Origin: Ophelia neglecta | Lineage: Eukaryota | DNA: 64,000 nucleotides | Direction: 5' to 3' | Assembly: GCA_965285935.1 (NCBI GenBank) | Contig: OZ260664.1 | Span: 85,994,001 to 86,058,000, forward strand | In this document: positions 3,001-55,128 of the stretch, piece after piece | Numbering within the stretch: the stretch's first letter is position 1 | Layout: each line of letters starts with the position of its first letter | Position numbers and translations under genes: made by a program | Notes under the pieces: generated by a model | Database searches by the model: none | Told to the model about the DNA's origin: nothing | The model's input: the letters and a program-made list of their open reading frames with translations, nothing else

Positions 3001-4139
3001 ATGTATTAACAGGTAAAATAAAGAAAGTATAAAGGTTTTGGTTAGTAAGCTTTCTGACCTCATAACAATAAATACTGACCAATTTACTTAAAACCTTTGA
3101 GATGGCAAATAGCAGGAGCTAATATCACGGGTATGGTCCAGTAGGTAGTAAAAAGACTATATTAGAAAATAAAGTTGGAATCAGTAGCGAGATATTTCGA
3201 TCAGTCATCACAATTTGCTGATAGAGAACATTAAAAAACATAATATCTGTTGATCAATATCTTCTCAACTGCGGATTCCTTTTGTGTTAGGTCCAAAATA
3301 ATGGAAGATTCCTAATTATTGATTGCCGTGGTCTGCAGAAATAAATGTAGATCTTAAACTTGTAAAAACAAGTTCATACCTACTTTTTTGTATTTGCAAT
3401 ACACTGCAATAACCTATATCAAATAGATAATGGGTATCCCATAAATCGGTGCATTGGTCATGTGTCAGTTTTAAATACCAAGTAGCCAGGGGTAGAATGT
3501 TCATCTGTATAAAGGTTCTGCTTACCACAATAAGAAGTTAATTAATAGTGTGTACACACCTGTGTAATGTATGCTGAACGATTTCGGAAGATATTCTGTA
3601 AAATTCGCTTGGAAATATATTTGACCTAGAATGAGAAACGAAAGTCTATGGAAGGTGCCATGTGATAAGATTAAAAACACAATATAACACCATGAATTGT
3701 TATGGTACCAAATTTAAACGTTTTACACACAAGAAGTTATATTCCAACTGAAACATAGTGGGCCAATTTGAGTCCACACACCTGCGTGCCGAATGATTCT
3801 TTTTTCTGCCTTTTTCTGAGAACTTTCTCTTTCGATATTATTTCAGAGTTCTCAAAAATGCGATCCAACTGGTCTTTTTGCCTGTAGTACAATAAGAACG
3901 TTGATCTTTAACCTGTCTTCACTTTTAACTTCACTCGCTGAAAATTATATTTTCAGTTTACTATGTTCCCAGTCTCCCATGACTCTAGTCTATTCTGTCA
4001 GTTACACCTACCCCAGTTTTACAACAAACGTTTATAGAGCGCCCCAGCCTTGATATTCTAGTCCTTGAGAGTTCCGGTCAAGTATTTATTGTTTACTGCA
4101 TCCCTCGGTCTCACCCTACTAGTACGTATAGTCGCCGGA

Positions 4140-4388
4140 ATGATTTTTATACGAAAGGCCTGTTTCGGTCTTAACTCGTATCTCAGATTAAAATTGGATT
4201 TAAGTATTTATGATGTATTTACTTTCAAAGCAGGCTTTCTGGAAGCAGGATTTGGTCTTAAACCTAGCTATGCTAGTCTTAAACTTAGGCTTGGTCAATG
4301 GAAACACCGCTTAACGCCATCTCAGCTAATCGGTAATAGGCTAATATAATCCGCATACTTAAAACCACTTCAAGAAACTGGGCCCTGG
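4140..4388. mobile_element. Inverted, diverged copy of the 11746-11984 MITE-like element in an ABCG-A intron
   Basis: 4290-4350 (CTCAGCTAATCGGTAATAGGCT) is the near reverse complement of 11790-11812 (AGCCTGTTACCGATTAACTGAG). It ends with AAACTGGGCCCTGG. Confidence 0.6.
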
Positions 4389-7300: not shown

Positions 7301-7422
7301 AATATTGTGCCCTTCTGTCCACTTGGGTGCTTTCGACCCGCAATAATGTCAAGTAGCCTGTTAAATTTAATAAAAGTCGATGAAAAAACTTGTTTACAAA
7401 AATCCTAAATGGCCAATGAAAC

Positions 7423-7425
<3 letters not shown>

Positions 7426-7476
<51 letters not shown>

Positions 7477-7478
7477 TA
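7426..7478. repeat. (TA)n microsatellite in an ABCG-A intron
   Basis: TATATA run of about 40 nt with an imperfect extension. Confidence 0.95.
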
Positions 7479-9129
7479 ATACTTCCCTTAACAATTTGCA
7501 GTTATCAAGAGTAGGATTTTGAGGGCCCTGGAGGCATATCCTGTTTAATTTTGGGAGCATAAGGGAAGGTACATAATCCTTATGCTCTGGCTTTAACCTT
7601 GAATAAGCTAAATTGTTATTTTTTATTAATTTACTCAATAGCTTATTGTCATAACTTACGACGTCTTTCCGCATCCCGTTGGCCCCAGAATCGCATTCAA
7701 ACCACATGGAAACCTGCAGCTACAAATCAGATGGAAAAGAAGAAAATTAGAATGCAATGGGATTTGAATCCATCAAGAGTAGTATTCGACGCCAGGACAA
7801 GTGGAAAAAACCGCATGAAAACCCAAAAACCCGTACGTGTTTTTAAAGCAATAGAATTTCATTTGTTTTCAATTTCAGTGTTTCATCGCCACAAACATAG
7901 TTATTATAATACAAACTGTCTATATCAGTTAGGGTTTGACAACATGTGCTTTATTTGCACTCATTAGTTTAGACAAAATAAAGGAAATATTAATATTATT
8001 TCCTCCCTCTATGTTCAGCGACGTTTAAATTTCATTTCCGCTGGATAATAAGCATTACAATGCACAGTTCCAATCGTTTACCCAGCCCCGTGCATGTTTT
8101 GTTTCAAACAACAAGTACTTTGTCAGGTCGATAACAGACTTATTCTTTGCTTGAGTCTAAGGTTACACGCCGCATCTACATATTTTATCATCCAATGTTA
8201 ATGCTAAACATCCTTAGGGTTAACCGCCCGTTAAAAAAATAAGGGCAAATACAAACCAATGTTTTGGTAGGAAATCGGTGTAAATGATGATGGATTGGGT
8301 ATGCATTTCCATACCATTAAGTTCAATATACCCATCACTCAATAATATTTTCACGTGCACCCTATGTATCAAATACCTCTGAATATTGTAAGTGCCTACC
8401 TGATATTTTCCAATATCATTTTCCTCGATTTATTCTTGCCAATTTCATATGACACGTCATGTAATGTAACTTCAGCCCCTATCGCCTCCGTGTCTTTGTG
8501 CGAAGGTGTAGCAGTCTGTATCGTCTCGGAGTATTTTTCCTGAAACAATGCCGTCTCTTCATGTGGGACCTCTTCTCCGGGAGTAGCCCCATCAAAGTGC
8601 GTCTCCGTGACTCCACGCTACATTCATCTCCTGGCAAAGCCTTAGTGTCTTCTTGTGAAGTTACTTCAGTCTCTTCGTCTACTGTCACAGGAACTTCAGC
8701 CTCGTTCGTCTCTATGGTTTGTCCCGTGGTAACTTCGATGCTTTTCGTCTCCAAGTCTTGCCCCGGAGAAAGTGCAAAGCCTTTAGTCTCCATATTGTGT
8801 CCTTTTATAACTTTTACATCAACAGTCTACGTGTCTTGGCTCACTGGCAATTCGTCGAGCGATGATGCATCGAGGCTAACAACTAGTTTATTTCAATAAC
8901 CAGCGTGACAGGGTGTCACACAAAAACTTCCCTTGGCTTGGTATGTATTATACCAGGACAAACATAGAGGTTATGCGAGGGTAGAGCCCAAAGTTTAAAA
9001 TGGCCGTAGCTTAACGACTTTTTACCAGGACGGCCATAGACTAGCCCACAATATGAACGAGCTTCTGAGATGCCATCACATGTTAAAACAATAATGTACA
9101 ATACAATTTAGAGTGGAGTAACACGATTT

Positions 9130-32100: not shown

Positions 32101-35100
32101 TAGTGGGTTGTATTTGTCCCGCATGCCGCAAATGTCATTAATTTATCTAAATCTAATGAAAACTCTTGTTGAATGATCAGATAAAATGTAACAAACCGGC
32201 TAGATGTGTGTCACTGCATAACTACAAAACTCATTAATTTTAGGTACTTGTCAATCACCTGTTAACACGGCGCCTGAGTCTGCATTAATGATGTCAAGAA
32301 AGAAATCTGCCGGGTTATTGTGCTCCTCACAGTGAAACCCTACGAAAATAAAACAAGAATGTTACTTAGTAATTGATATATATCATTTGTAAAAGAAATT
32401 TAAACCAATACAATACATCGCAAATACTATCCTCTCCTAGCTATTCCCAATTTTTGCTTAGAATTAATACTACGACTAGGCAAACCGTCCTTCCTTGTCA
32501 TTTACTGTATAACAGACACCTGCAGTGTTATTCGTCATATATATTTAATTTGAGAATCAAGTAATGGGAGGGTATGTATGCAATCAGGGTTCCAATCCTC
32601 ATTGGTCTAAAGATATACATATTAAAATGTAATAGATCATTCTATCTATTTCTTTAAAATTTTACTTCAATATGTGAAAAAAGTCCGTGTAAATTTGTAA
32701 TTATATGTATTTTCAATGAACCAATAAACAATTTTGATTTATAATTATAGTGATTATCACTAAAGGGTTTGCTGTCATAATATAAATGATAGATGACCAC
32801 GGTGGTTTGGGAAAGCATCCGTTTCAAAACAAGCAACAACGGACTAACACAAAAAAATTGCGTAAAATATCATTAACAAAAATTGATCTGAAGACACACT
32901 AAGACGAATGAGTGTTGAAAATGTATGTGAAGAATAAGCATATAACAAATTTAAGAGTTTTAATGACAGTAAAATGGGCATATCCACCACTTGGGGCTTA
33001 TTGATCTGCCTACGTTAGTTACCAATGGCGAATAGGTGGAAAAGACATAGACACAATAAATATTATAATGTATTTCTGCAGATTTAACACCATTATGGTC
33101 GAATCGAAAGCGATTTCCAATACACACGGGGTATCCCAGTTAAAATTGCTGTATTAATTTCAAAAAAGCTAATGAATGTCATTTCTATACATCTTTTGGT
33201 ATTTGAACCTATGTATAAGAAGCATATTTGAAACATATTAGATTAATTGCTTTCTAAACTTGACTTTTTCAACTGTTGAAACAATTATGGCCACTTACCT
33301 TGGATTGAGTGGTAGCTCATGTTAATTGTAATAGGATTGTTATATGTATGTTTCGCTTTAGACTGCAGTGCCAGCTATGTGAAGGGCAGAATTAAAGTAG
33401 TAATGAATCGTCGGAGAACATGTCACCATAACACTACATCGCACAACAACTTAGGTTTTACTAGGACCAGATTTTGTATACAGCCTGCACAAAATCCTTA
33501 TCAAACATCAAAGAGTAATAAATCATTGTCCTATATCGCCATGTGTGCAAATACACAAGTTGTTCTTCCCGTCAACAACGGATGTCGTACTACATCTCAA
33601 GTGACTCAGATACAACTTCCATAGCTATTGATATTTTCGCTCGAGGGATCAGACAGTGGTATGAGAGTTAGCAATTTTAGTCGAGAACGAAATCTATTGC
33701 TGCTCTTATACGCGCGAACATTAGTCTTTAAGAAGCAACGGCACAATTATCCAAAACCATTGTATGTCATAAAGAAACCGATATATTATTAATACTAGCT
33801 CAAATCTGGGAAAAATATGAAAAGAAATCAAACATACCGATGTTTTCAAAGTACTCGATGCTTCGATTTCCAGGTCCATGATATAATAATCTTCCCAGGG
33901 ACAACAGTGTGATTTGATCAAATAATTTGAATATTGAATAACGGGGTTGGTGAATGGACAAGATAATGGTATGCCCGTGGTTGGCTAGGCTGAAAATATG
34001 CATAAAACTGTCCTTAGCTTAGGTGTGTTTTGTAATTTACTCCGAAAACTATATTAAGTATGTGCTCAGGAATATACTGTTCTCTTCACACTATTATATT
34101 AAGAAAAACATTGGCGTAAAAGAAGTGTATGCATACTTGTCCTTCTTTATTCAAATTTTGTTACATCATATACATATATTATTTAACCGGCTTTCGTCAT
34201 CTACGCGGTAAAACAGTTGATATTTTAGACATTGGCAGGAAATGTGGATATCGAAATAAGATTTATTCAGCTAGGACTAATTGAATCGATTATATCTATC
34301 GATGCTAAGATGTTTATATGCGCTACTTGGTACATTAATATTAGATAGAAATGGAAAATATACACTGCGGGAACACGTACGTTTTGAGAGTGTGCATTAT
34401 AGCGTTGGCTGTGCTGGCATCAAGACCGGTGGTAGGTTCGTCAAGGAATATCACCTTTGGAGAAATTACAAGTTCCATGCCGATGTTCGTTCGTTTTCTC
34501 TCTCCTCCAGAAACTCCCCGGATGTAAATAGTCCCCACCTGACATACAAAATATATACATCTGTCGATAGGCATTTAATGTCTCGAAACTCATACACAAC
34601 AGACATAATCGAATATTAGTTGTGTTTTGAACAGAAATGATCGAACTTACGAATGTCAGAGAGGCCAGACAGGAAATGATTGGTTGATTGCATAAATATT
34701 TTTTCTGTATGACATTGTGTACAAATAAAATGAAATACACACAATCCATTTTGAGAGTATTGAAGTTTGAGAATATATAGAAGGTCAAAAGGTACACAAA
34801 CTTGAGTACACCCGATGATGGAACCAGTTTAATTGACACCGGCGAAGATGAAGATAAGTCAGGCAAAACGTTATAGTAGTAATGTTTTTCTATATGCTGT
34901 GTCTCCTACACGCTGGATCGGTCCAATACCGAGAAGAGAAGTGTATTGTTGTGATAAAGTCAGTAGTGCGTACATTACCTTGGTATCGGCACAATGCGTC
35001 AATCCCATATCAAGAAGAATAGTGTCTACCAATCTATCTTTAACCTCTTTTGATAAATCTGTTCCTAGTCTCAGATTAGCAGAAAATGCTATATTTTCCT

Positions 35101-37251
35101 TTACTGTCAGAGTGCCATACACTGCATCTTCCTGTTGGCGAGAAGCAGTTTGTAACATGAATAAATTTACTGGTTGCGATCAGATGATTTTATACTCAGA
35201 AGTGACTGCAAAGTCGTTTCGCACCTGAACAACATATCCGATGCTTCTCCGAAAATTTTCTGGACGGCTTTTTCCATTTACCAAAACGAGGCCTGCTTGT
35301 CCATTCGGGTCCTTTCTGCCGGCAATTATGTCCAGGAGTCTAGTCAATTAAAGACTCATCAGTGAAAAGTAGTACGATTTGAATTTATTCAAAATGTATA
35401 ATGACTAACAAGTTTAGACCAGCGAAATATTAATATCACTTACGATGTCTTTCCACATCCGGTTGGTCCAAGAATCGCATTCAAACCACTGGGATACTTG
35501 CAGCTGTACACAATATTGAAATAAAGTCATGTTAATGAATCACCGCAAGTAAATTAGTTTGTACTTGATAATACCTGACAAAATATATGTGGGTGTGAGA
35601 GACTTGGACGAAACGTGGATGAGTTGTTTGTGTATTAGAATACAAATAATAATTTTGACAATGGACATAATGGGTATGGGTAACCTGGTTTTGTAGTAAA
35701 GCATGCTTATGATTGACATAACTTGAATAATACTTCAATGTGGCAGACTTCGTACAAATGTAGGCGACTTGGTTACATCATAATTATAGCTACAGTGTAT
35801 GATAATTGGCTTAAAACGGAGTGTGAGAAACGTGGTACTGGTATTCCTTTTACTTAAAATACTTGATAATAGTTGTGACTAAATATGTGGCTGTGGTGGA
35901 CTTGGATGTTGAAATGTGTGTGAATGGTTTTTGTACTTAAATACCTATGACAGTTAATATAAAAAATATAATATCTAATAAGTCTATGTTCTTGAGTCAA
36001 AAGTTGTCATAAGTCATACAAAACTATACTTAGAAATTCTTCCAATTATCAGAAGCTTTTTTTGATATTAGCCAAACATGAGGCAACGACATAGCACACG
36101 GAACTGTTGTCAAAATGTGATATCTTTGGCTAGATTTAGTACAATACAAGACAGGACAGTTCCGGCAATACAGGTAGACGGGTCCGTTGAAGGGCCGATT
36201 AATGCACTATTTGTTAATTATATTGCTTTGCCTGCCGGGTATCCACCCCCTTTTTGTATGGACTGAAGAGCATACGCCACTCCCTTCCGTTTTAATGTAT
36301 GATCAGCCTTTATAAGGGGAAAACATACCGTCTTTATAGGAGGAAAATTTATTTGAATGTTGAATATGCAATGTAAAGCAGCACTCTGATATTCACACCA
36401 ATTACTCTTACTGATCATTGAGCCATTATCTGACTACTAACAATTGCTAATGTTGCAGGGTTCTTAACGGATTAACTGTATGTAAATGAGCTTGGTAATG
36501 GGTAATGCATTGTTAAAAGTAAAAGTAACAATTAATCCCTGAGATTTAAATCCATGCCATGAACTGCTTTTTTTAAGTTGGCGGATTCAAGGTAATTAGC
36601 GAGATAATCCTGTTGTTATTCTATGTGCATTATATCCTCTGAACTCAGTTAGGTTTATATGATTCTTTGATGGAGTTTGTGGATCGAATAAACAACACAT
36701 GATTTGTTTTCCTAACATTCGTAATATTTTTCTGGATAGACAGGGACAGGTGCTAAGTATTTGATTTATTGTTCTCATATATCTTCGAAATAGGAGAAAG
36801 TGAAATCATAACGTATGTTGGGTGGGAATCTGCTTAGTGTAGATGCAGTCTGGTGAAACTCAATATTCTTTAACAATTTGCCATCAAGCATTACAAGGTC
36901 AAGCTTGAAACATCCAACCTGTTAGTTCGGGACCTTTTACTGAGTATCTTTTATTTCATTTATGTAATAATTTGAATCATAGGACATTATCATTATCATG
37001 ACAATTACTCCTTAGTTATACAGTTTAGGCAATATCCACGGTATAGTGTGAAGACGAGTTGGTTCAACTGTCTTAATATTACGCCTCTACTATGTAGTAA
37101 TTCACATTATACTGAAAATGTATGATAAATGCTTGACAAACCTAATATTTGCCAGTATATCCTTCCCTGGGGTCTTTCCGACAATTGCATATGACACATT
37201 ATGTAAAGTGACTTCAGCTCCGATCGTGTCCATGTCTTTTGGCACTGTCAT
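26122..37251 (-). CDS. ABCG2: ABCG2-like half ABC transporter, copy B (intact, 645 aa)
   Basis: Minus-strand GT-AG exons: 37142-37251 (ATG, MTVPKDMDTIGAEVTLHNVSY), 35444-35503 (GPTGCGKTS), 35225-35339, 34979-35131, 34381-34538 (VSGGERKR, LDEPTTGLD), 33838-33989 (SIHQPRY), 32259-32339 (NPADF), 30681-30858, 30478-30574, 30242-30307, 28880-28965, 28279-28368, 28047-28171, 27513-27667, 27289-27378, 26650-26714, 26122-26278. Total is 1938 nt, open, ending KKTT-stop. NBD-then-TMD order is the ABCG topology, and the motifs closely follow ABCG2. Confidence 0.93.
26936..27159. mobile_element. 224-bp MITE with terminal inverted repeats and an 8-bp target-site duplication
   Basis: Left end GGCTTTTGATTAAAAGCGGAGG matches the reverse complement of the right end, GGCTATTGATTAAACGCGGAGG. 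TTTTCAGA lies on both flanks (26928-26935 and 27160-27167). Internal CCTAACCC repeats. Confidence 0.85.
29091..29230 (-). mobile_element. Small LINE (CR1-like) fragment in an ABCG-B intron
   Basis: VNTISKSNQVLGMLKRT resembles the CR1-type post-RT motif (KAN..LG.L.R). Confidence 0.4.
31560..31805. repeat. Two-copy tandem repeat, about 110 bp matching core, period about 133 bp
   Basis: AATCTATTAAT..GAATTGATCAATA.AATTTGA.CTAAATGGTCTTAAT..TCTGGAACCCACAC... occurs at about 31562 and again at about 31695. Confidence 0.9.
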
Positions 37252-41697: not shown

Positions 41698-44600
41698 ATG
41701 GACTTGAACCAGGCGGTGGCCATAGTTGGGGTCGCCTGCCGCTTTCCGGGAGGAGCCAACCTCGATGAATTCTGGAAAACGCTGGAGGAAGGGAAATGTC
41801 TTATGGAAGACATCCGGAAAGACAGATGGAGCATTGATGCTTTTTACGACCCAAACAAAGACGCCGCCGGCAAAACATACTCTAAACGGGCAGCTTTCAT
41901 TGACAAGTAGGATTTTTATATTGTCGTACAGGGGCGAATACAGTTTTAAATAGTGACAAAATGCGTGCGATGCACCATTCCACAAAAGCTACAAAGTTTA
42001 TTATCACAGCGACGTTGAGATGGTCTAAAATAATTGGTGTATTGCGCGATATATATTCGATTACAGGGTAAATTTTTAACATTTGAAGGCAGTTATGAAT
42101 AATATTTAAACAAGCATATCCGATAAAGGTGTGATTTAGTATGTTACATTGTAATTTAGATGGTAAATTATCAAACAAGTAATGTATTATTAAGTGTGTT
42201 CTTTAATAATGCCTTTTACAAGTGGTCTGACTCTAGGAGCTTGCAAAACGAATTTTATTCATACAGTATGAGCATTTATCACTATAGCCGGCTTATCTCG
42301 AGTACATGAGTCAGATCAAGGTACTTCTTGGCGGAGCCTCCCGCGGCGGCACTTGCAATAATTGAGCTTGTATTGCAAAACAACCGATTGGGATAACCGA
42401 CTAGGTATAAGTATAAGTCTGACGGGAATTGAAAATTGGCAATTTGCATTTACACCAACTCGTGAATAACAAATTACCACATGTACCTGGTTTCCTCTAG
42501 TATTAGAATAAAAGCAGGGTGTCTTATGCTGCTTTGATATTTTACACAAAGTGAGTGTCAAGCATAAGAGAAAATCTAGATCCGCTTTGGCGAAATCAAA
42601 CTGGCCTCCACTGATTTGTTATAATTAGTTCACTGAATTTTTTTCAATCTCAGACTCTCGACGAATATAGTTAACCTCATATAGCACAGAACTGAGGTGT
42701 TGTCTAATTGAATTTTTTTTAAATATTCCAAATTTAGAGAATATATAATATTACTTAATTTTTATCACACTACACATGTCTAGTTCACGGGGTCTCAGAA
42801 TCTGATCCTCACGAAGTTATTCAATTTCATTCGTCTCAGGAACGACAGAAGAAATCAAGCAGATGCCAGATTTCAGCTAGTCAAATTCCAACCTCGTTAA
42901 TTGCAACTAGTGTCAAAATGGAGACTAGAAGAGGCTGCTGTTGTAATGATTTTTTTCGTGGTTGTGCCTCGGTGTGCCCTGTTATATCAGAGTGTTTAAT
43001 CCCACAATCTTCATTCCATTGTGCACATTTCATACAAGGATCTACAGAGGCTAGGCCGTTGACTAATTTATTACTTTTATTTACTCCCTCTCAATGTTAC
43101 ACACGATTATTCTTATTATAGCCCAACGTCCGTATAACTGCTATAAATTCTAAGCCACTACTCTAGTCTAGCACATTGTTATAGGATAATCGATTAATTC
43201 AATACCTAATATGAGGTTGCAAACGTAGTGGGTAGGAGAATTCTAGACATGTACTGTTGCACCTAGGGCAGTAATCAACCAATATTTCATGATTTAGGCA
43301 CAACAGTTTATTCCAAGTTGGGTTTTTACAGGTAAACTGAATACACGGAGAGCTTTATTGGGAATATTTTATCAAAATGAGTCATTAAACCTTTAAGTAC
43401 TTTTTTAATAGAATCAAACGGGTGCAAAGATTCTGAAAGCAATTTATTACCTTTTTATATATAAAAAAACAGTATACGAGCAGAATTGTCCTTTGTTATA
43501 TTCACAATGAAGCGGATAGTCCTCGCAGTCTAAAACACACGCTTCTATTGCAGCGGAAATGCCAGGTTTAGTGTTTGGCAGCATAAGCATAAATAAGTTA
43601 AAAACACGGCGAGGCAAGGCGCCGACGTGACGTGACTTGACTGGACACGTATATTGAAAACCTTAGTGTATATAACTGTAACGCGTCTATTCGAGACCTA
43701 TAGCCTATAAGCTATAACCTATAACGCGTTTATTCCTGACCTATAGCCTATGGTACTATAACGCGTTTATTCCTGACCTATAGCCTACGGTACTAAATCG
43801 CGTCTATTCTAGACCTGACCTATAGCCTACGGTACTGTATCGCGTTTTTTCTAGAACTATAGCCTTTGGTACTGTAAGGCGGTTATTCAAGACCTAGAGC
43901 TTATGCTACTGTAAGGCGTCTAATCGAGACTTATAGCCTATGGTAGTGTTAGAGGTCTTTGCGAGACATATAGCCTTTGGTAGTGTTAGAGGTCTATTCG
44001 AGACATACAGCCTTTGGTACTGTAATGTGTCTATTTGAGACCTATAGCCAATGATATTGTAACGCGTCTATTCTGTAAATCGTCTATTCGAGATCTATAG
44101 CCTTGTGTTACATAACGCGTGTTTACGAGACCTATAGCCTATGCCACTATGAACCAAGTAACTTTTATGATACATGTATATTCATTTTCGGGATCTACGT
44201 GAAATTGATAAATAGATATTCTTGCATGATCGTCTAAATCTTGATTTAAAACCCCACAAGAGTTTCAAACCATCGGATAGAAATATAAATTGCTTACTTT
44301 CTTTCAGCTGGGACGAGTGGGACAATACCTTTTTTGAAGTCAGCGAGGCGGAGGCAGAACGAATGGATCCTCAACAAAAGATCGCGCTTGAATGCGTCTA
44401 CAAAGCGATAGAGAACGCGGGCATCAGCATTGACGACCTCTGGGGCAGTAACACCAGTGTGTATATAGGTAAGTAGTATGGTAATCACCATCCTGATAAG
44501 CAAATACGATTTGCTGTTAGCAAGACGTGTACATTTTGCTGAATACATTTCATAGTAAGGATTTTTCAATTTTGTTGCGGGGGTGGGGGGGGGGGAGATT

Positions 44601-47600
44601 ATTGTATCCGAGTGATTTCTTTACCAAATGGCTGTACATTCAGAATGCCTTTATTTCAGCCAATTTTTAAAGCAAATTCATTGACACGGTTTGCGATTGA
44701 GGCCTCCCAAAACGTTGGCCGAATTTTCAGCTTCATGGTCACAGCGATATCTCCGAAATTGAAGGCCTTCACGGACAATATCTCGGCTGCTATTCTTAAA
44801 ATATGAACGCTCGCATCTCGACTGTTCATTATCTAGCCCAATCATGTGTGTAGGTGTTGACACGTTTTTCATAACTTACCATCGCCAACTTGGAGTAGTA
44901 TTGCAGTATGGAATTGTCTACACACAGTGAGTTAATGTTACGTCATGACAAGTAGTGCAGGATCGGATCGTTTATACACCAGAATGCACTGGTTAACATT
45001 ACCTCGGGAAACCCCTTTATAATGTTATGTATCATATCAATTGAACATACATAATGAACACATTCTTAAGGCAGTATTTCTTCGTTATATTAGTACGCAT
45101 TAGAACTTGTCTTGGTAATTCAATAATATAGGTTGTAGATTTTGCCTTGTAAAAAACACTTTCTCTTCGATTTTAATTATTTACAAGTGCTTTTTAAATT
45201 AAATTAGTTTTTGCTTTTGAAGGCAGATGACCATGGCCAATTTCACTTGGACTCAATTTTCCTGCTCAAGTTCTAAGACAACATATCATGTTTGTTGTTT
45301 CTTTTGTGGTGTGCTAATTTCTGGTATTTTATTACTTTTCACCCGGGCCTCTTGAGTGATGTATTTGGCCCTTTGGCTGGTATCTCCCGATGCTGTAAGA
45401 ACTGTTAGACGGGCGGTGCTTCATTTATGATTTTGCGTTGTCAGCCGGGTATCCACTAAGGTCTTTTTTTCATCCTGATAATACTTACCTACTTTAGATT
45501 TCATCTAAAAATACTATGCATGAAAGATTAAGAATACCATATCACATAACAGATGGGAGCTGAGTCTTTGTGTGTTTATGTGTGTTGAAGCGAGGGGTGT
45601 CTTGTAAAAAGCCTTTTTGTTATGTTTCCTTTTCTTCGCAAAAGTATGTATGAATTGTTTATCTTTTAATTGGGATCAGTCTATTCCAAAATCGCCTATG
45701 TGTTCTTGTATTATTTAGAGAAAGAGAACACGGTTTGTGAGAAGGTGCTGATTCTGCCGAAAGGTGTTCATTTTCATTGAATATAGCTACCTTCAAAGAC
45801 AATGCTAATTTAAAACCACATAATACATATTTGACATTAATATTTAAAACACTAAACGTCTACATAAAACCGGATTCGGAGTTCCTTTTCATTATTGAAC
45901 CATATAAAAAGTAGTATGCTTATATTTCAGGACAAATGAATAATGATAAGGCGGGCCTGTCCGAGAGAGATTTGTCAGAGGTGTCCAGTTATACCAGTAC
46001 CGGAATCGCTCGGAGTATGCTGTCCAACCGAGTGTCTTACACCTACAATCTACAAGGCCCTTCTATGACTCTGGACACGGCCTGCTCGGCGGGACTCGTG
46101 GCGGTCCATCAGGGCATCCGCTCTATCTTGTCAGGTAAGATACATTTTGCGGGTTAGGGTATGCACTAACATCGATGTATTCAATAACAAAACTCCCTTT
46201 TAAAAAAGAAACTAAAATCTGACCTGTGTGCTAACCAGCTGGTATGTGTATATATCTGTAATGATTTTACCACGCCGGAAATATATCTTAATTGCTTAAG
46301 AGTTGATAAATTTACACTGATGCAACCTTCATCTCGATTTGGCACAGATACCTCCTTGGTAAATAGTTATATAGGCGTTTTCTACAAGAAAAATTCCGAC
46401 CATGAAATAGAACCAAATAAAATACAATATTGATACGGCTGCTTTCTGCCAAATAGCGCCATGTTTCGTTGAATTTTTTTCCAATTATATGAAGGTTACG
46501 TAACAACTCCATGGGGGCCACTGGACCATGTACACCTAAATAATCGAGTTTTTAGAAATCCAAAATATCGAGTTATTAGTTCGCAATGGTGTGCTTATAT
46601 AGATATCGTAATTTCGAGTGAAAAATGTCCCTTGATAACCTATTAGGTTCCCGTGTACTCTCGCACAAGAAATTACCTTTTAATCCAACGCGACCAAGTG
46701 GTTACCCTACGGCTGTCTGAATCAAACTATACTAAACATGTATTTCAATAAAAAATACATGCCGCCATACCTTGTTTCGGGAATTATAACCATTTTTAAT
46801 CAACCAGGTTCGTATTATGTATAAAGTGGTAATGTCCAAGTAAGATAACAAAACATAATGCATTGACATATATGAATTATAAAATGAGTTCTTTAAGCGC
46901 CCTATGCAATATCTACCAGCCAGATAATTAGGGTATGCTATCGCTGTTATCGCTGAGAGGAGACAAAGTTAAAGTGTTGGAATCCGCATTATAATAGTTG
47001 TACTAAACTTGACACCTAACACATTTTATTTGATTTGATCATTTCCAGGCGAATGCTGTGTATCAATATGTGGAGGTATTAGCCTCATACTCTCCCCATC
47101 ACCATTTGTAGGCCTAAGTAAGGCCCGCATGTCTTCAGAGACCGGAACATGTCACGCCTTCTCTGACAAGGCCGATGGTTACGCCAGAGGTGAAGGGAGC
47201 GGTGTTCTCGTGCTCAAATCAGTCAAACAGGTGGATTATTTACTGTGATACTTAGAGATATACAAGGTCCCAACGTATTAAAATGAGCACTTTTTTCCAT
47301 TTATTCTAAAGGTACATTTAAAGTAGTTCTGACTATTTTAAGGCCAAAGAAGACGGTGATTACATATGGGGTTTCATTGCATCAGCGGTCAACCAGGACG
47401 GCCACACTGTCACACCGATCACTGCACCAAGTGTTACCATGCAGGAGAAATTACTAAGAGAGCTGTATGGAAAAATACAACTCGAACCTGAGGTGGTTCA
47501 ATATGTGGAAGCACACGGTAGGCTACTTCACGCGAAGGGGCAGTATGGTGGTCTCAGGAGAAAGAAAAACGTTGCTAAAGTTGTCGTAAAAATATGTCAT

Positions 47601-50600
47601 ATTATCACATTCTGGCGGGGCACATACGCCGATACATGTCCAGCTCCCTTTACCAGTGTATAATTCTTGTTTGGTTGTGTGTAATGTCAATTGCTACCAT
47701 TATTTCCTTAAAAAGGGAAGTGTTATTCAAGTGCCATTTTATAGCAAATATCCGTCAAATATAGAATTGATATATAAAGATAAAAAAGCATCGGCAGCCG
47801 AAGTCAGAAATCAATTAGCGGGTGCCGTCACGCAAGCTTATTGTGAAAGCAAACTCCATTAAGAGGCACAATAGATTAATGCACAGCACCATTCCAGCCT
47901 TTTTGATTAGCATGGGGCCAGTTTTAGCCCCCTTGCTGCTGCGGAACATTTTGAATTACATTTTATCACTATTTGTAAGTAGTGTTTTCGTTGCCGGATC
48001 TTTCGACATATCAAAGCACAGCATTACAATTATCGTTTTGGTGTGTCTGTGAAAGTAAAGAAATATATAAATTGATCCTCAGAAATCTCGGTGAAGATGG
48101 CCCGTGCACGGTAGGTTTAGTCACTCCTATTTTCAAGGAAATTTGGTCTTAACATTGATTTTTGTTTACTTGTTTTCAATAATTAACGGATTTCTGCGGT
48201 AAACTATAGAACCTATATTCAAATGCGTGACCAAAAAACACTACTTTCATAGGTAAAACAAGGACCCATGGAAAGTACGTCCTATTGTTCGACCCATGTT
48301 TCCGTGAATCTACATTAAATGTAGTATCCTATCGATTGAAAGTGTTCAGATACTTGTTCTTTAAAATGACATTTGTTTTATTTTCCAGGGACTGGAACAC
48401 GCGCAGGCGACCCGGTAGAAGTCGGAAGTCTGGGCCGTGTTATCGGCGCCGCCCATGACAAGAAAGATCCCTGTTGGATAGGTTCTGTAAAAACCAATAT
48501 CGGTCATACAGAATCAGCGGCCGGTATTGCTGGAACAATCAAAGTTTTGCTGATGATGAGGCATGGTAAGATCGTTCCGTCTTTACACTTTGATGTGCCC
48601 AACCCGAACATTGACTGGAATTCGTCAAACCTTGCGGTACCTACGTCGGTGATGCCTTGGCAAGTAAACCCGCAGGGATTACGCATCGCTGGCATAAATT
48701 CTTTTGGTTTCGGTGGAACAAATGCGCACGCTATTCTGGTGCAAGAAGAACATTTTCCTAAAACCAGCGGTCTGGGCGATAAAGGTAATCATGACCTGAA
48801 CATAGTTACAATTTCGGGAAAGTGTCAAAATGCTTTAACACAATCTATGGCTGACCTTCTCGCTGCCATCAAATCAGGGCAAATTCAAAACAATGTTCTT
48901 TCTCTGAGCTTCACTTCAACTGCTCGACGAAGCCATTTCCGCTTTAGAAGAGCATTTACTGTTCACGACACGTTAGAACTTGCAGCGCAGTTAGAAAAGA
49001 AGGCAGAAATGCCGACCCATACTTCTTTTAGCAAAGAAAATTCCATTGTTTTTGTTTTCGGTGGCATGGGCACTCACTGGTCTGGGATGGGAATGCAACT
49101 CATTCAATGTGAGAGGGTTTTCCGTGAGAAAATGGAAGAGATTGATTCCATTATACAGCAGTGCGAAGGTTGGGGGCTCCTTAGTGCAATACAGACTGGT
49201 AGCGATCTGTCTGACCCAACCGTAGGTCAGCCAGCTATCTTTGCTATTCAGGTTTCTTTGGCCACTCTTTGGAGGTCTTGGGATGTCCTTCCCCGTGCTG
49301 TAATTGGCCTCTCCGTTGGAGAAGTTGCCGCAGCTCACATTGCGGGTAAACTTAACCTCTCCGATGCAGTCAAGGTGATCTGTACTAGAGGCAAGCTCCT
49401 CAGCCAAGTAACTGGTGGATCCATGCTTGTCATCGGGAACATGGAAGTTTCCGCTGTCAAATTGTACATTAGTCAGTTTGGTGGCACGGTTGAAATAGGT
49501 GCACAAAATAGTCCAATAACCTGCACCATATCTGGCGATGAAAAACAAATTGATGCAATCCACAACGAGCTGAATTCTTTGAAAGCGACAGAAAACCCTC
49601 GCTTGTTTCTCAGAAAACTTCCGGTCAATATCGCCTTCCATAGCCATTTTATTGATTCGATTGTACAGCCTTTAGGAGAACAACTCGCACAGCTATCCGA
49701 AGCACATCTTGAGAATTCCACCGACATCATCTCATCAGTCTCTGGTAAAAAGGCAAGTACTGGGGATTTCACTACAGCACACTATTGGCAAAAGAATGCT
49801 CGACAAGGGGCAGTGTTCTTTCAAGGGATACAAACACTTTCAAAAATGGTTAAGAGTCCTATTTTCATCGAGATTAGCCCTAAACCTGCTTTAGGACGCA
49901 ACATCACTGAAACTCTTAACGGTCATCCGCCTTTGATAGTCCCATCGATGAAAGAGAATGAAGAATCGAGTACGATTATAAAATCGCTGGCCGCGATTTA
50001 TGCAAGTGGGGTAAACATTGCATGGAAGTCATTTTGGGGTAATGTCAAAGCGGAAATATCAACTTTCCCTCGATATCAATACCAGAGAAAGAGACTGTAT
50101 AACGAAACTAAATCCGTTACAAAATGGCGATTGGGACAAAATGGATCAGATTGTCACAGTACACGTGAACATGATACTGGCTTTCTTGTGCCAGAGGGGG
50201 AGGGTTGGCTCTGTCTGATTAACAAAGAAACAACGCCTTTTGTTTACGACCATCGACGCACCGGGAAGCCATTAGTTCCCGCTGCAATGTATGCCGAGAT
50301 CGGTTTGTCAGCATGTATTGCTACTTTGCAAAACAAGACCCATTTGAAAAACAGCACCACAAATGTATCACTAGTTAACGCACTTCACCTAAATCAGGAA
50401 GATGCAGAATCCAAAATCCATGTTTTAGCTGACCAACAACCTGAGATGCCATGCAATTACTTGCGGTTCTTTATTAAAGGAGGCTCAATGCTGCTGGCAG
50501 AAGGTGATGTTCAGTTTCTCCAAGAAGAAGATACTGGTGATATATTTGACATTGAAGCCATCAAAGTAAGATGTGCTGAGTACTTTGAAGCTGAACACTT

Positions 50601-53600
50601 ATATGACCTACTGGAAACGCACAAATACACATATGGTAAACGTATGCGAGCTGTGGAAGAAGGTGTCAAAAACAAGACTGAGTGCTTGACAAAAATTGTC
50701 CTCCCTAAGGACGTCCATCATGAGAGGAGGGGTGTTATCATTCATCCAGCCATTTTGGACTCCTGCTTTCAACTGGTCGCCTTGCTGATTTCCCAGGACG
50801 CTCGGAAGTCCCTGGCTGTTCCAGTCGCGCTCCATGGACTGAAAGTACTAGGTGACCCTATGAATGCAAAATGGATTTACATGAAGGTTATTTTTAAAAC
50901 TAAATCCCAGTCAGAGTTTTCTGCGCATATCCTAGATATCAATGGCCATGAGCTTGCAAAAGCTAGTCGCATTATCATTAAATCTATCGATGAGGTTTTG
51001 CTGCAGAATCCGTCTGAACTGCGTTACATGCAAGGTTGGATACTAACGAAACGTGACGTAAAAAAGGACCAGACTAATGATTATATAGATGAATCAGCCA
51101 AGAACACTAACATATGCCATATCTATGCCAACAGTGAGTTGAACCGAGATGTGACCACATCGTTAACAGGGCAAGGGGCTTGCGTAACGCCGATTGCATG
51201 TCGTAATATCACAAGTGACATTGAGAAATGCTTCATAGAAGTTAGTCCAAAGGCCATTTTGTTTTCCATGGCTATACGCCCACAAGCTGCCACTCAGTTC
51301 ACTGAATCTGACCTGGCAGTGTCCGAGGAATGTTGCTGGTGTCTCATGAACATTTTAAAGTATTGTTTGAAACGCAAATACATCCTACCAGTATTTGTAC
51401 TGACCAAGCACGTTTATTTGCGACAAGACCAGGCACCTTGGGCTCAGCTGCATGATTTACCACAACTGAATGCCAACTCGAGTCTGATAGGCTCCGCACT
51501 GTGGGGTTTGGCCAGAACCGCTGTTCGTGAGGGTCTCCGAGTCATCTGTATTGACATGATTCGCTGTAACCTAGAAGAAATCAACAAAGTTTCTTCTCTG
51601 GTAATGAGCGACACAATGCCTTACCCTGAGTGGGTTCTCGCTGATTATTATTCATACAGAAATGAGTTTCTACCCTACATGGGACCACCCGCTCACAACC
51701 ATAGAGTCATACCCATGCGACATGACGATGTTGTACGGATTGTGTCTAAAACTAGTCATGGGAGTATAACAGTTCAACAAGATGTTGTGGAACTAAAGCA
51801 GGAAGACACACATGGACATGTTAAAGTAGTTAGTGCCAGACTCCATGATAACAGCTGGTTTCCTTCTTACTGGAATGACAATCCTCATGACGCGTGCACC
51901 ATTAATGACGAGGCTCAGACCATATTGGCTTTGGATTACACGGCAAAGATGTTGAATCCTGATAGGCAAGGCGAATTTTTCGGCTGTCAGCCCATACCAC
52001 TCGTGGAAGTGGCTCATGTAGATAGCAGAACGCTAGTTCCTGTATCGTTGCTCCCCAGCGACCAGCCAATGCTTTCCCTCTGGCTTGTTTCTTGGGATGT
52101 TTTACACAAACACGCCGCCGGAATTAATCATATTCGGGTTCACAACCTGGCTAACTGGCATATTCTGGAAAACTGCATTAAGTCTGTTGCACAAGCTCTG
52201 ACCGTTAGCGTTGAAGAAGACACGTCTGTTATTGTACCATTAGCAATAGTCTTCGCATGTAAGAACATGGCGCCCAAAGCGTTACATTCCATATTGCAAA
52301 CCTCGGAAAAGGCAATAGTTATAACATCAGATGCCAATTTGAGAGTTGTCTGTGGATCATTAATGGACGAAGGGCATTTTAGAAATGTAACTTTCTACAA
52401 CCATGTAGATTTATTTGTGCCCCATCAATTGGTTGAGCTGGTCCCAAATTTCAAAGCGTGGCTGATAAAATGCCCCCTTCCCAAAATTCCACTGCAATGC
52501 AAAGTCATTAAGCCAAAGCCAAACGAACTGCGAGAAGGCTTTGTTATTAATGGAATAAAAAACCAAGGGAACAACATTGTTATGGAATTACCACAGAGAG
52601 ACATTAGTACAATTCCAAGAATTACTTACCAAACACAAACTCTGTTCAGATCAAACGGTTGTTACATTTTGGTGGGTGCCAACAAAGGGCAGGGGTTAGC
52701 ATTTCTAAAGCAAATGGCCGCACTTGGCGCTGGTGTTCTGATTGCTTTGTCACGAACTCCACCTACGAAGGCAGTATTTGAAGAATATGAGCTCATGTCA
52801 AAAGAAAACAATGTTCAAATTCATTGGGTTCAAACCGACGCTACAGACAAGAACAGTCTCATTGAGGCATTCGTCACCATTGACAGGCTGCGCGGAAAAT
52901 GCCCTATAAGAGGGATATTCCAAGGAGCTGTAGTTCTCGCTGATGCGTTGGTGCAGAACTTAACATACGAACAATTTGTCTATGCTTACAGGGTTAAAGT
53001 GCATGGCACATTTTACCTCCACTCTCTTACACAAGATATGGAATTGGATTACTTCGTGTTGCATTCATCCATCACTGCTATATTAGGGAACATAGGACAG
53101 ACAGCGTATGGGGCTGCAAATGAATTTATGAATTGTTTTGCTAGTTACCGGCGGTCCATTGGTCTCCCTGGCCAAAGCATCAATTGGTCGCCTCTTAAGT
53201 ATGGGGTTATTCAGTGGAATACAGCTGCAAAGCGCCATTTAATGTCTGTTGGCATTGTTCCTTTAGAGAATGATGAAGTGTGGTATTGCATGAAACATGC
53301 CTTGCTAGGCGATCTTACATACGTGACCTATGGCAAATTTGACCTGGAAAAGTTGATAACTAAGGGTCACCAGGAAGCCTTTGGTATTTCAAGTAGACTG
53401 ATATTTCTTGCCACAACTGCCTCTCTAAAAAGGAACGATCCCATAGACTCGCAAATTATGCCTATCAATCTGTCCAAAATGGCTTCTGAAGCACAAGCGT
53501 CCAAATCAAAATCACAGTGTTATATTGAAGACATTATATCTGAACAGTTGTCAATCAGTTCACAAGAACTTGCTGGTAGCCACGCATTACCATTGGCCGA

Positions 53601-55128
53601 TTTGGGATTCAATTCAATGGATGCGGTATATGTTGCTAGTAAAATTCAGCAAGATTTCAACATCCACATTGATACCGATGGAAACTCTAGTATCGATAGT
53701 ATGACAACTGATTTGTGGTCTAAGTTTGAAGGTTTGCAGACAGAGTCAACTGATGCTAAACCGTTTGGGCCATTTGAACAGCGAATATTGCAACTTGTTC
53801 AGAACTCGACCATGTATCGCCGTCACATGTCAAGCTTCTTGACGTTAGAGATTACAAACTGTTTTTTGAGCCCAGACTCCTTGGTAGATATGATGAAGGG
53901 CATCATTGAAAAGCTACCACATTTGAGGACTTCCACCAGAATTAACCATGAAGGCCGAGTTACCTTGATCAGGAGAAGTGTAGACAGTATTAACGTTCAA
54001 GCTGCGAGCGTAACAACTATATCCTTGGCTAAGATGCGAAACCATCTTATTTTTCTTGCAAACGATCTCAACGTCTCGACGGAAACACCTTTTAAAGTCC
54101 AGGTTCATAACAGTTATGACAATCACCAGAGTATGTTCCTGGGAATGGTGTTTCACCGGGTTGTGGATGATTGCCACACAATTCACCAGATCTTGAGTTT
54201 ACTGATCAACGCCATGCAGCGCAAACCCCAACCTCTACCATTATACATGGTCAAGGAAGATGCTTATCGAATCCAGGAAATAGTTGCTGAAAGATATTCA
54301 GAAAACTTTTGGCGCCACGTCCTTCCAGATATGTATGAGATGGTTAAAATGCCGCAATGCTTTTTCCATTCATCTGATAATAGTGAGAAATTTGACGGTA
54401 GCATGTTCAAAGTGCTGCTTGATGGTCGCAGCCATGAAAGCGCGTTAGATGCCTCAATGACTGCAGAAGTCAGCTTGAATCAGTATGTGTTGGCTTTGTT
54501 CCAGCTGTACATTCATTTCTGTTCTGACGCAAAAGTTGTTATAGTTGAAATGACTATTGATATGCGTGAAATTTTACCTAAGGATTTCCGCGATTACTCC
54601 GGAAACTTGGACAACGAACTGCTTGTTGTTTCAACAATTGATCCCTCTATTAATTGTCAAACAAGACTATTGCAGGAACAGGTAATTGAACAGTGCAAAC
54701 ATATTCAAAAATGTGTCCAACATGGACTTTTCCCAACCCAATCAATGCTTGATATGATCAAATTTCCAGGCAGTAATTCAGGTAAATCGGTCCAATTCGC
54801 CTTTGAGTATCGCCAAGGCCACGAAACATGCGATGCAACTGAACTAATGGACATGGCTGTGAGAGTGGTGGAAATTATACCTTCCTCTTTTGGAAAACAA
54901 ACTCTGAAGTTGTATGTTGTTGAGAACAAGTCAGCTAAACAGCTTGAGCTTTATCTATTATCTGGCCCAGGCTATTTTTCAGAGTATGGTGTCAAAGCCT
55001 TTGCCACAGGTTTCCAGGCATTTTTAAATAACTGCTCGCTAAGTATGCAGCGTCCACTCAAAGAATTCAGTGTAGCTGTGGAGAAAGAACATGGAGGTGT
55101 TTTGACAGTGACAACTGACACCATTTAA
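41698..55128 (+). CDS. Type I iterative-type polyketide synthase copy B, KS-AT-DH-psiKR-degenerate ER-KR-ACP-C (intact, 2556 aa)
   Basis: Exons 41698-41906, 44308-44468, 45931-46134, 47049-47230, 47343-47517, 48389-55128; total 7671 nt, open. KS triad: DTACS, EAHGTGT, KTNIGHTE. AT: GLSVG (49306-49320), conserved Arg and IAFHS. DH: HRRTGKPLVP (50251-50280) and HPAILDSCFQ. KR: GANKGQG, VLAD, GQTAYGAAN. ACP: GFNS (53605-53616). C-like tail: HLRTS, FHRVVDD (54151-54171), FWR, GNLDNEL, HGLFP. Confidence 0.95.
43675..44150. repeat. 37-bp minisatellite, about 12-13 diverged units, in the first coding-region intron of PKS-B
   Basis: A unit like CTATAGCCTATGGTACTATAACGCGTTTATTCCTGAC repeats head-to-tail with no unique spacers. 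Confidence 0.92.
53760..55100 (+). other. C-terminal condensation-like domain of PKS-B (counterpart in PKS-A at about 22975-24290)
   Basis: About 440 aa after the ACP, with ordered NRPS C-domain-like motifs: KLPHLRTS (cf. RHxxLRT), PFKVQV (cf. PLFR), FHRVVDD (cf. HHxxxDG), FWR, ALFQLYIH, IDMR...GNLDNEL (cf. R...GxFvN), HGLFP (cf. HQxxP). No GxSxG thioesterase motif seen. Confidence 0.8.

What the first reader, a model, noticed from the sequence alone, without database searches (positions are those of the whole stretch)
53760..55128. Animal PKS ending in a condensation-like domain with a variant FHxVVDD active site instead of a thioesterase
Seen: after the ACP both copies carry about 440 aa with the ordered C-domain motifs. 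The core reads FHRVVDD in B (54151-54171) and FHSVVDD in A (23364-23384), keeping the second His and the Asp of HHxxxDG but with H1>F and G>D. No adenylation domain or TE occurs in the window. Known: terminal C domains can release chains by amide or ester formation or cyclisation, and some PKS-terminal C domains (LovB) are non-canonical. Inference: the chain is off-loaded onto a free amine or alcohol, giving a polyene amide or ester.
Basis: partly seen in the sequence, partly recalled or inferred. Interest (0 to 1): 0.85.

Follow-up and report, generated by a model that had tools for sequence, protein, structure and literature searches.

The report
Non-canonical condensation-like tail on animal PKS
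Both polyketide synthase genes in this animal window end in a real but very divergent condensation-type domain. It has probably lost the usual catalytic histidine, so it resembles the puzzling end domain of the fungal lovastatin synthase more than an enzyme that releases the product as an amide or ester.

Summary
PKS-B (last exon 48373-55128) and PKS-A (17475-24305) read KS-AT-DH-KR-ACP, followed by about 450 aa that pass Pfam Condensation (PF00668). FHRVVDD and FHSVVDD sit exactly at the stated coordinates. The genome holds 11 full copies of this PKS-C family on one chromosome. All 11 pass PF00668, and dN/dS is about 0.3. A profile of 80 bacterial C domains matches the family at 97% probability. 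An AlphaFold model built with those sequences (pLDDT 85) matches solved C domains at TM 0.72-0.77, with the MokA/LovB-type CON domain among the best.

Five of six alignment approaches place H132 on the first His of HHxxxDG and R/S133 on the catalytic second His, with D137 on Asp and invariant T140 on Ser. The motif is then H(R/S)xxxD, as in LovB CON and glycopeptide X-domains. Other residues invariant in bacterial C domains are also replaced. Release onto a free amine or alcohol is therefore possible but not favoured. A CON-like, non-amide-forming role acting on the ACP-bound chain fits better.

Terminal C domains in animal PKSs are already noted in the literature (molluscs, amphioxus, acorn worm), but none has been characterised. 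No expression data could be obtained. The scan's other notes on this window concern the ABCG cassette and the ER region, not this domain.

The parts
41698..47520 (+). Upstream exons of PKS-B encoding the N-terminal part of the KS: about 41698-41900, 44300-44476, 45936-46150 and 47439-47520. Exon ends are approximate and the exons were not joined.
   Evidence: The ORF list shows KS-type peptides, including DTACSAGL (active-site Cys) and VEAHG.
48373..53760 (+). PKS-B large last exon, first part: KS C-terminal half, AT, DH, about 500 aa with no Pfam hit, KR and ACP (PP-binding at residues 1717-1768 of the ORF, about 53521-53676).
   Evidence: Pfam hits. The ACP Ser (GF[N/T]SMD) and the KR Ser/Tyr are conserved in all 11 paralogues.
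53761..55128 (+). PKS-B terminal condensation-like domain (455 aa plus stop). The Pfam Condensation envelope spans about 53866-55089.
   Evidence: PF00668 at 43.2 bits. hhalign against 80 bacterial C domains gives Prob 97.3%, E 6e-11 over 417 columns. AF2 model pLDDT 85. Foldseek TM 0.72-0.77 to solved C domains.
54151..54180 (+). C3 (HHxxxDG-equivalent) motif of copy B, F131-H132-R133-V-V-D136-D137-C-H-T140. Favoured register: H132 = first His, R133 = catalytic-His position, D137 = Asp, T140 = Ser.
   Evidence: Translation. Register evidence, dissenting. F131, H132, V134, D136, D137 and T140 are invariant in 11 paralogues.
53923..53931 (+). C2 remnant L55-R56-T57 (the LRT of RHExLRT). The RHE part is replaced by K/R/T/Q-L-P.
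54565..54567 (+). Invariant R269. It aligns with the Arg conserved in 96% of bacterial C domains at the start of the floor loop. I infer that it corresponds to LovB CON R337, which bridges to the motif Asp and Thr.
   Evidence: column 327. The LovB CON description is in PMC6260248.
54601..54621 (+). C5 motif, G281-N-L-D-N285-E-L287. Gly and Asn are retained, but the terminal Arg of the motif is replaced at 290.
54721..54735 (+). C6 motif, H321-G-L-F-P325. His and Pro are retained.
22974..24305 (+). PKS-A terminal condensation-like domain (443 aa plus stop), 53% identical to copy B. Its C3 motif FHSVVDD lies at 23364-23384.
   Evidence: BLASTP E 2e-168. PF00668 at 33.9 bits. Translation.
19335..19337 (+). 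In-frame TAA interrupting PKS-A between AT and DH. Copy B has Leu at this position.
   Evidence: The sister A-type copies elsewhere on the chromosome have open frames of 2252 and 2282 aa.

Best explanation
The last ~450 residues of both PKS genes form a genuine, two-lobed condensation-superfamily (CAT-fold) domain fused directly after a functional-looking ACP. It was already part of this PKS before the family expanded to at least 11 copies, and it is kept under purifying selection. Its core motif most likely reads H-(R/S)-V-V-D-D-x-x-T against HHxxxDGxS. The catalytic second His is therefore lost, while the first His, the Asp, the Ser/Thr and the floor-loop Arg are invariant. That makes it a non-canonical, LovB-CON-like terminal domain. 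Inferred mechanism: the ACP delivers the finished (probably unsaturated) chain into the donor side of the domain. The domain then acts on the tethered chain without forming a canonical peptide-type bond. It may template folding or cyclisation, or present the thioester for hydrolysis, intramolecular attack or attack by a trans-acting enzyme. Shown: fold membership, conservation, and loss of several canonical residues. Inferred: the register of the motif, and any role in processing or release.
For: Family and fold. PF00668 is above cut-off in 11 of 11 paralogues. All 30 ESM-feature hits are Condensation clusters at 0.99. hhalign gives Prob 97.3% over 417 columns against an independent profile of 80 bacterial C domains. 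Even the shallow AF2 model (pLDDT 44) hit only C-superfamily chains (189 at E<=0.001; N-lobe to CAT at Z 9.9, rmsd 3.1 A over 134 residues). The deep-MSA model (pLDDT 85, pTM 0.89) gives TM 0.72-0.77 to C domains, with MokA CON 6ad3 at 0.76/0.77 and atlas hits at 0.77-0.82. Selection. dN/dS is 0.27-0.35 on divergent pairs, against 0.16-0.27 for the adjacent KR/ACP part. There are 75 invariant columns, concentrated on the C1, C2, C3, C5 and C6 motifs. The trees of the C domain and of the upstream 500 aa are congruent. Register. H132 = H1 and R/S133 = H2 (20/21). Invariant D137, T140 (+3) and R269 reproduce the D192-T195-R337 network described for LovB CON (PMC6260248). Loss of canonical residues: the C1 Gln, RHE of C2, H2, Y152, G263 and R290. 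Precedent. In LovB-like iPKSs the HRxxxDG domain is essential, works in trans, the Arg is dispensable and the Asp is required (PMC13492342).
Against: The bacterial-profile-to-sequence alignment gives the other register (H132 = catalytic His, D136 = Asp) for 9 of 9 paralogues shown. In that register the HxxxD spacing and both residues are invariant. D136 is also invariant, which the favoured register does not explain. The deep AF2 model was steered by an MSA that already embodies the favoured register, so it is not independent on that point, and I could not inspect coordinates. No TE, reductase or other release enzyme was found nearby, which leaves this domain as the only candidate release catalyst in cis. 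No fungal CON sequences were available for a direct sequence comparison.
Confidence: 0.55

Rival explanations
1. H132 is the catalytic His (xHxxxD, as in fungal CT domains where only the first His is lost). The domain releases the chain by transfer to a free amine or alcohol (VibH, enacyloxin or truncated PKS-NRPS type) or by intramolecular cyclisation.
For: The bacterial HMM aligns H132 to H2 and D136 to Asp in all paralogues shown, and H132 and D136 are invariant. There is no TE, A or R domain in cis or nearby, so a release function is needed. Solved chain-releasing C domains (6cgo enacyloxin, VibH 1l5a, SgcC5, CT 5dij) are among the structural matches. CT domains work with SHxxxD (PMC6260248).
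Against: Five other alignment approaches give the other register. The alignment needs a 3-residue deletion at the start of the core helix and has low posterior probabilities. Residues 100% conserved in active bacterial C domains are replaced. The C2 Arg partner is not conserved (K/R/T/Q). Other animal PKSs end at the ACP and still release product (medaka OlPKS, 2051 aa, KS-AT-DH-KR-ACP, PMC4604110), so a cis release domain is not obligatory.
Confidence: 0.25
2. The domain is a non-catalytic docking platform, like the glycopeptide X-domain (HRxxxDD). It would recruit a trans-acting tailoring or release enzyme, or the neighbouring ABCG exporter, to the ACP-bound chain.
For: X-domains share the second-His-to-Arg change and an Asp after the motif Asp (PMC6260248). 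X-domain structures 4tx2, 4tx3 and 6m7l are among the hits (TM 0.63-0.70). An ABCG gene lies head-to-head with each PKS (note s1-739802). Stand-alone PapA5/AATase-like acyltransferases with an intact HxxxDG motif exist in the genome.
Against: No partner enzyme gene is clustered with the PKS copies examined. The invariant positions lie on the canonical tunnel motifs rather than on an identified surface patch. Nothing was tested.
Confidence: 0.12
3. The domain is a decaying relic of an ancestral PKS-NRPS hybrid with no present function.
For: Many canonical residues are lost. A published mollusc PKS has SCVVFDF at the same site with no His at all (Suppl. data 11 of PMC10764717; aligned by eye). 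Copy A in this window carries a premature stop. There are no detectable homologues in 1.84 billion representative proteins.
Against: dN/dS of about 0.3 holds over dS up to 1.5. All 11 copies keep an open frame through the domain, with 75 invariant columns. The divergence pattern is the same as in the catalytic KR/ACP part.
Confidence: 0.08

Closest known systems
LovB-like fungal iterative PKSs (LovB, MokA, ClaE) with a C-terminal CON domain bearing HRxxxDG
   Same: An iterative reducing PKS with KS-AT-DH-...-KR-ACP followed by a terminal condensation-like domain and no A or T domain. In the favoured register the second His is replaced by Arg, and the Asp, the Ser/Thr three residues later and the floor-loop Arg are retained. 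MokA CON (6ad3) is joint best by TM-score (0.76/0.77).
   Different: There is no detectable sequence similarity beyond the superfamily level. Gly after the Asp is C/R/S here. A-type copies have Ser instead of Arg. No trans-ER or trans-TE gene was seen nearby. The host is an animal. Whether the resemblance reflects shared ancestry or convergence was not tested, because no fungal sequences were available.
Animal PKSs annotated with C domains: the mollusc PKS clade (Lin et al. 2024, PMC10764717) and amphioxus and acorn worm KS-AT-DH-KR-ACP-C-AMP (Hojo et al. 2015, PMC4604110)
   Same: An animal-clade type I PKS with introns only in the KS region and one huge exon, and a weak Condensation hit (38 bits in the published mollusc example, 38-43 bits here) after the ACP.
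   Different: The deuterostome examples continue into an adenylation domain and this one stops after C. The published mollusc example reads SCVVFDF at the motif, with no His. None of these has been studied biochemically.
Glycopeptide NRPS X-domain (HRxxxDD; 4tx2, 4tx3, 6m7l)
   Same: A C-fold domain with the catalytic His replaced by Arg. It is non-catalytic and sits at the end of the assembly line (structural matches).
   Different: The X-domain recruits P450s in an NRPS. No P450 genes or equivalents were found here.
Fungal CT macrocyclising domain (SHxxxD; 5dij) and free-nucleophile C enzymes (VibH 1l5a, enacyloxin Bamb_5915 6cgo, SgcC5 4znm)
   Same: Terminal or stand-alone C-fold enzymes that release carrier-bound chains. 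All are structural matches.
   Different: They keep the catalytic second His. Here that is supported by only one of six alignment approaches.
Truncated PKS-NRPS (PKS-C) making long-chain N-acyl amides in fungi (Hai & Tang 2018, JACS; cited in PMC13492342)
   Same: A PKS ending in a C domain without A-T that off-loads onto a free amine.
   Different: I know it only from the reference list and title, because the paper was not held. Its motif could not be compared.

Membership tests
Condensation superfamily (Pfam PF00668; CAT-like fold) | Profile HMM score above the curated cut-off over most of the model | tested here: met
   38.5-43.8 bits against a cut-off of 30.6, model positions 39-451 of 456. 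Met in 11 of 11 paralogues.
Condensation superfamily (Pfam PF00668; CAT-like fold) | Two CAT-like lobes forming the V-shaped pseudo-dimer fold | tested here: met
   AF2 pLDDT 85. TM 0.72-0.77 to solved C domains over about 450 columns. The N-lobe alone matches chloramphenicol acetyltransferase at rmsd 3.1 A. Caveat: the confident model used an MSA seeded with bacterial C domains.
Catalytically canonical C domain (LCL, DCL or starter type) | HHxxxDG with the second His present | tested here: inconclusive
   The second-His position is R or S in five alignment approaches and is H132 in one. I give about 3:1 against retention.
Catalytically canonical C domain (LCL, DCL or starter type) | Other residues invariant in working C domains: the C1 Gln, RHE of C2, the Tyr after C3, the Gly before the floor loop and the C5 Arg | tested here: not met
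   Q becomes K/E/R, RHE becomes (K/R/T/Q)LP, Y152 becomes L/M/V, G263 becomes E/K and R290 becomes V/I/F/N, measured against 52 bacterial C domains.
LovB-like CON domain | C-terminal position directly after the ACP of an iterative reducing PKS, with no A or T domain | tested here: met
LovB-like CON domain | HRxxxDG motif: first His and Asp kept, second His replaced by Arg | tested here: inconclusive
   The favoured register gives HRVVDDC in 8 copies and HSVVDDC in 3. Gly is not kept, and the register is not certain.
LovB-like CON domain | Sequence or phylogenetic grouping with fungal CON domains | not tested
The only support is a structural match to MokA CON, which is not clearly better than matches to bacterial C domains.
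LovB-like CON domain | Domain essential for product formation and able to act in trans | not testable with these tools
   This needs heterologous expression.
Fungal CT or VibH-type releasing C domain | Catalytic second His present and an open acceptor channel for a free or intramolecular nucleophile | tested here: inconclusive
   The His is retained only under the minority register. Channel geometry could not be inspected because model coordinates are not exposed.

The most novel reading that the evidence does not exclude
Animals carry their own expanded family of LovB-style synthases: a reducing iterative PKS with a dead ER and a His-less CON-type end domain. The domain would direct cyclisation (for example decalin-type) or an unprecedented His-independent chain release. 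It would be paired with a dedicated ABCG exporter in tandemly amplified cassettes, forming an animal biosynthetic gene cluster for an unknown secreted polyketide.
Probability: 0.15. Interest if true: 0.75.

Novelty: new variant of a known kind. Interest (0 to 1): 0.45.

Why it matters
How animal polyketide synthases let go of their products is largely unknown. Lin et al. 2024 say so for most animal FAS-like PKSs (AFPKs). The role of His-less terminal C domains is unresolved even in the well-studied lovastatin system. This genome offers 11 natural variants (40-98% identical) of such a domain on intact single-exon PKS bodies. Only a few residues are invariant at the motif (H132, D136, D137, T140, R269), which gives a compact mutagenesis set. 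If the domain proves necessary for product formation, it would link animal and fungal PKS logic and help predict products of the many uncharacterised animal PKSs. If it is dispensable, it is a well-dated example of a retained pseudo-enzyme domain. For annotation, the practical lesson is that HxxxD look-alikes can be read in two registers with opposite functional implications.

Tried and rejected
1. Word-indexed homologue searches found nothing. I searched with the C region inside the full ORF and with the 11-sequence alignment.
2. An exhaustive phmmer of the domain against 1.84 billion representatives gave 0 hits at E<=0.001. These libraries hold few animal proteins, so this does not show that the family is unique.
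3. A homologue search with the KS-AT region returned mostly multimodular bacterial PKSs and one fish PKS without a C domain. It was useful only as a source of three bona fide hybrid C domains.
4. Sequence search of the PDB gave only a marginal hit (8xjz; E 1.4 for the single sequence, 0.011 for the profile).
5. AF2 on the 11 paralogues alone gave pLDDT 44. I used it only to show that even a poor model hits C domains exclusively.
No expression evidence was obtained and read laying was not used.
7. A findings search by words returned nothing.
8. Hai & Tang 2018 could not be read.
9. The spliced full-length PKS-B was not assembled.
10. The idea that extra exons (A, T or TE) follow the stop codon is rejected. 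No such ORFs lie downstream and there are no Pfam matches in the region.
11. I did not try to identify the species.

Full report
**What is there.** The window is G000:C7:85,994,001-86,058,000 of a 762-Mb animal genome. A single open frame, 48373-55128 (+), encodes 2,251 residues. Pfam reads it as follows:
- KS C-terminal half
- AT
- DH
- about 500 residues with no hit
- KR
- PP-binding
- Condensation (PF00668, model positions 39-451 of 456, above the curated cut-off)

The N-terminal half of the KS lies in short exons at about 41.7, 44.3, 45.9 and 47.4 kb.

Copy A occupies 17475-24305 in one frame. It has the same domain order and a single TAA at 19335-19337, where copy B has Leu. The two terminal domains are 53% identical. 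The strings FHRVVDD and FHSVVDD are exactly at the coordinates given. The finding's start is one base ahead of the codon boundary. Nothing coding follows the stop. No Thioesterase or AMP-binding match lies in the window or near any paralogue. An ABCG-type transporter lies head-to-head upstream of each PKS.

**Is it a real condensation-type domain?** Yes, on several independent lines.
- The genome holds 11 full copies and one fragment of this PKS-C family, all on contig C7. All 11 pass PF00668 when scanned alone.
- Protein-language-model features place the domain among Condensation clusters in 30 of 30 hits at 0.99.
- I collected 80 bona fide bacterial C domains. A profile-profile comparison with the 11-sequence family gives 97.3% probability, E 6e-11, over 417 aligned columns.
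- An AF2 model from the paralogues alone was poor (pLDDT 44). Even so, Foldseek returned only C-superfamily chains (189 at E<=0.001), and its N-lobe matched chloramphenicol acetyltransferase at 3.1 A over 134 residues.
- With 52 bacterial C domains added to the alignment, the model reached pLDDT 85 and pTM 0.89. It matches solved C domains at TM 0.72-0.77 and ESM-Atlas Condensation clusters at 0.77-0.82. This second model is guided by the bacterial sequences, so it confirms compatibility with the fold rather than discovering it.

**Is it maintained?** Yes.
- dN/dS is 0.27-0.35 on divergent pairs (dS 0.5-1.6), against 0.16-0.27 for the adjacent 500 residues that include KR and ACP.
- There are 75 invariant columns. 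They concentrate on the C1 Arg, the C2 LRT, the C3 block, the C5 G..N..L and the C6 H...P.
- The ACP serine and the KR Ser/Tyr are conserved in all copies.
- Trees of the C-like domain and of the upstream part have the same four clades. The fusion therefore predates the expansion and no domain swapping is visible.

**The register problem.** A shift of one residue is equally gap-free. It gives H132 = first His, R/S133 = second His, D137 = Asp, C/R/S138 = Gly, H/Y139 = Trp and T140 = Ser. I tested this six ways.

The shifted register is given by:
- pairwise phmmer to an NRPS chain in the PDB and to three hybrid PKS-NRPS C domains (6 of 6)
- hhalign to one C domain
- hhalign to 80 C domains
- the family HMM scored against the 80 bacterial domains (20 of 21 alignments spanning the motif)
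- a joint MAFFT alignment of 63 sequences, whose only invariant columns are H132 and D137, with a gapless block

That alignment deletes three residues at the start of the following helix and has low posterior probabilities.

Conservation also favours the shift. T140 and R269 are invariant, and D137, T140 (+3) and R269 reproduce the Asp192-Thr195-Arg337 network described for the LovB CON domain (PMC6260248). I put the shifted register at roughly 3:1.

Independently of the register, residues that are 100% conserved in the 52 bacterial domains are replaced here: the C1 Gln, the Tyr at 152 and the Gly at 263. The same holds for RHE of C2 and the C5 Arg.

**What that implies.** PMC6260248 states that the second His is replaced by Arg in LovB CON and in the glycopeptide X-domain, and that the first His is replaced by Ser in the macrocyclising CT domain. 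The two registers therefore map onto two known classes with opposite behaviour.
- The LovB-like class is described in PMC13492342. The terminal HRxxxDG domain is essential and works in trans. The Arg is dispensable and the Asp is required. The function is still unknown, and a separate TE and ER are co-expressed.
- The architecture here is a reducing iterative PKS with a terminal C-like domain and no A-T. According to another note on this window, which I did not test, it also has a degenerate ER. That is closest to the LovB-like class.
- My best reading (0.55) is a CON-like, non-amide-forming domain that acts on the ACP-tethered chain.
Its strongest argument is that no other release activity is encoded nearby.
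- An X-domain-like docking role (0.12) and a functionless relic (0.08) follow.

**Relation to the literature.** Animal PKSs with C domains are already on record.
- Lin et al. 2024 state that the mollusc PKS clade has members with and without C domains, and that introns cluster at the N-terminus. That is the gene structure seen here.
- Their supplementary GenBank file shows a C-terminal Condensation_LCL hit of 38 bits whose motif reads SCVVFDF.
- Hojo et al. 2015 tabulate KS-AT-DH-KR-ACP-C-AMP proteins in amphioxus and acorn worm.
- I found no paper that characterises such a domain in any animal.

The finding is therefore a new variant of a known kind. Its added points are the size of the family, the conserved H(R/S)VVDD..T core, and the resemblance to LovB-type CON domains.

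**Limits.** The species was not identified. No orthologues from other animals and no fungal CON sequences were available. Model coordinates could not be inspected, and the full spliced protein was not assembled.

Noticed in passing
G000:C7, loci L001-L012 (C7:16.88-17.45 Mb, 85.77-86.05 Mb, 93.94 Mb, 95.88-95.92 Mb): The PKS-C gene is an 11-copy family plus one fragment, all on one chromosome. It includes three tandem repeats of an A-type/B-type pair spaced about 30 kb apart within 280 kb. B-type copies are 94-98% identical to each other.
   Followed up: partly
window 19335-19337: PKS-A in this window has an in-frame TAA between AT and DH. The two sister A-type copies elsewhere have uninterrupted frames of 2252 and 2282 aa. 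This copy is therefore probably a young pseudogene or a nonsense allele.
   Followed up: partly
L013:1219-2697, L014:1208-2686, L015:1200-2678 (G000:C2:87.17-87.28 Mb): There are three tandem single-exon ORFs of 492 aa matching Pfam AATase (49 bits), the N-terminal part of Condensation (32 bits) and weakly PapA_C. They carry an intact RHEIIDG (HxxxDG) motif. These stand-alone PapA5-like acyltransferases could in principle take acyl chains off a PKS carrier protein.
   Followed up: partly
window about 1959-8793 (-) and about 33800-35158 (-): ABCG-type half-transporter exons (Walker B/signature peptides such as VSGGERKR...LDEPTTGLD and ILSIHQPRYSIFKLFD) lie head-to-head upstream of each PKS copy.
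   Followed up: no
window 51000-52600 (ORF residues about 880-1420 of PKS-B): About 500 residues between DH and KR give no Pfam hit at all. This is where an MT/ER-type region would sit in related synthases.
   Followed up: no
L012 (G000:C7:95878185-95878930, minus strand): A fragment covers only residues 2-249 of the C-like domain, in two frames. It lies 40 kb from the full copy L004 and is a broken duplicate.
   Followed up: no
window 53640-53660 (ACP): The phosphopantetheine site reads G-F-(N/T)-S-M-D in all 11 copies instead of the usual G-x-D-S-L. The Ser is kept, but the preceding Asp is Asn or Thr.
   Followed up: no
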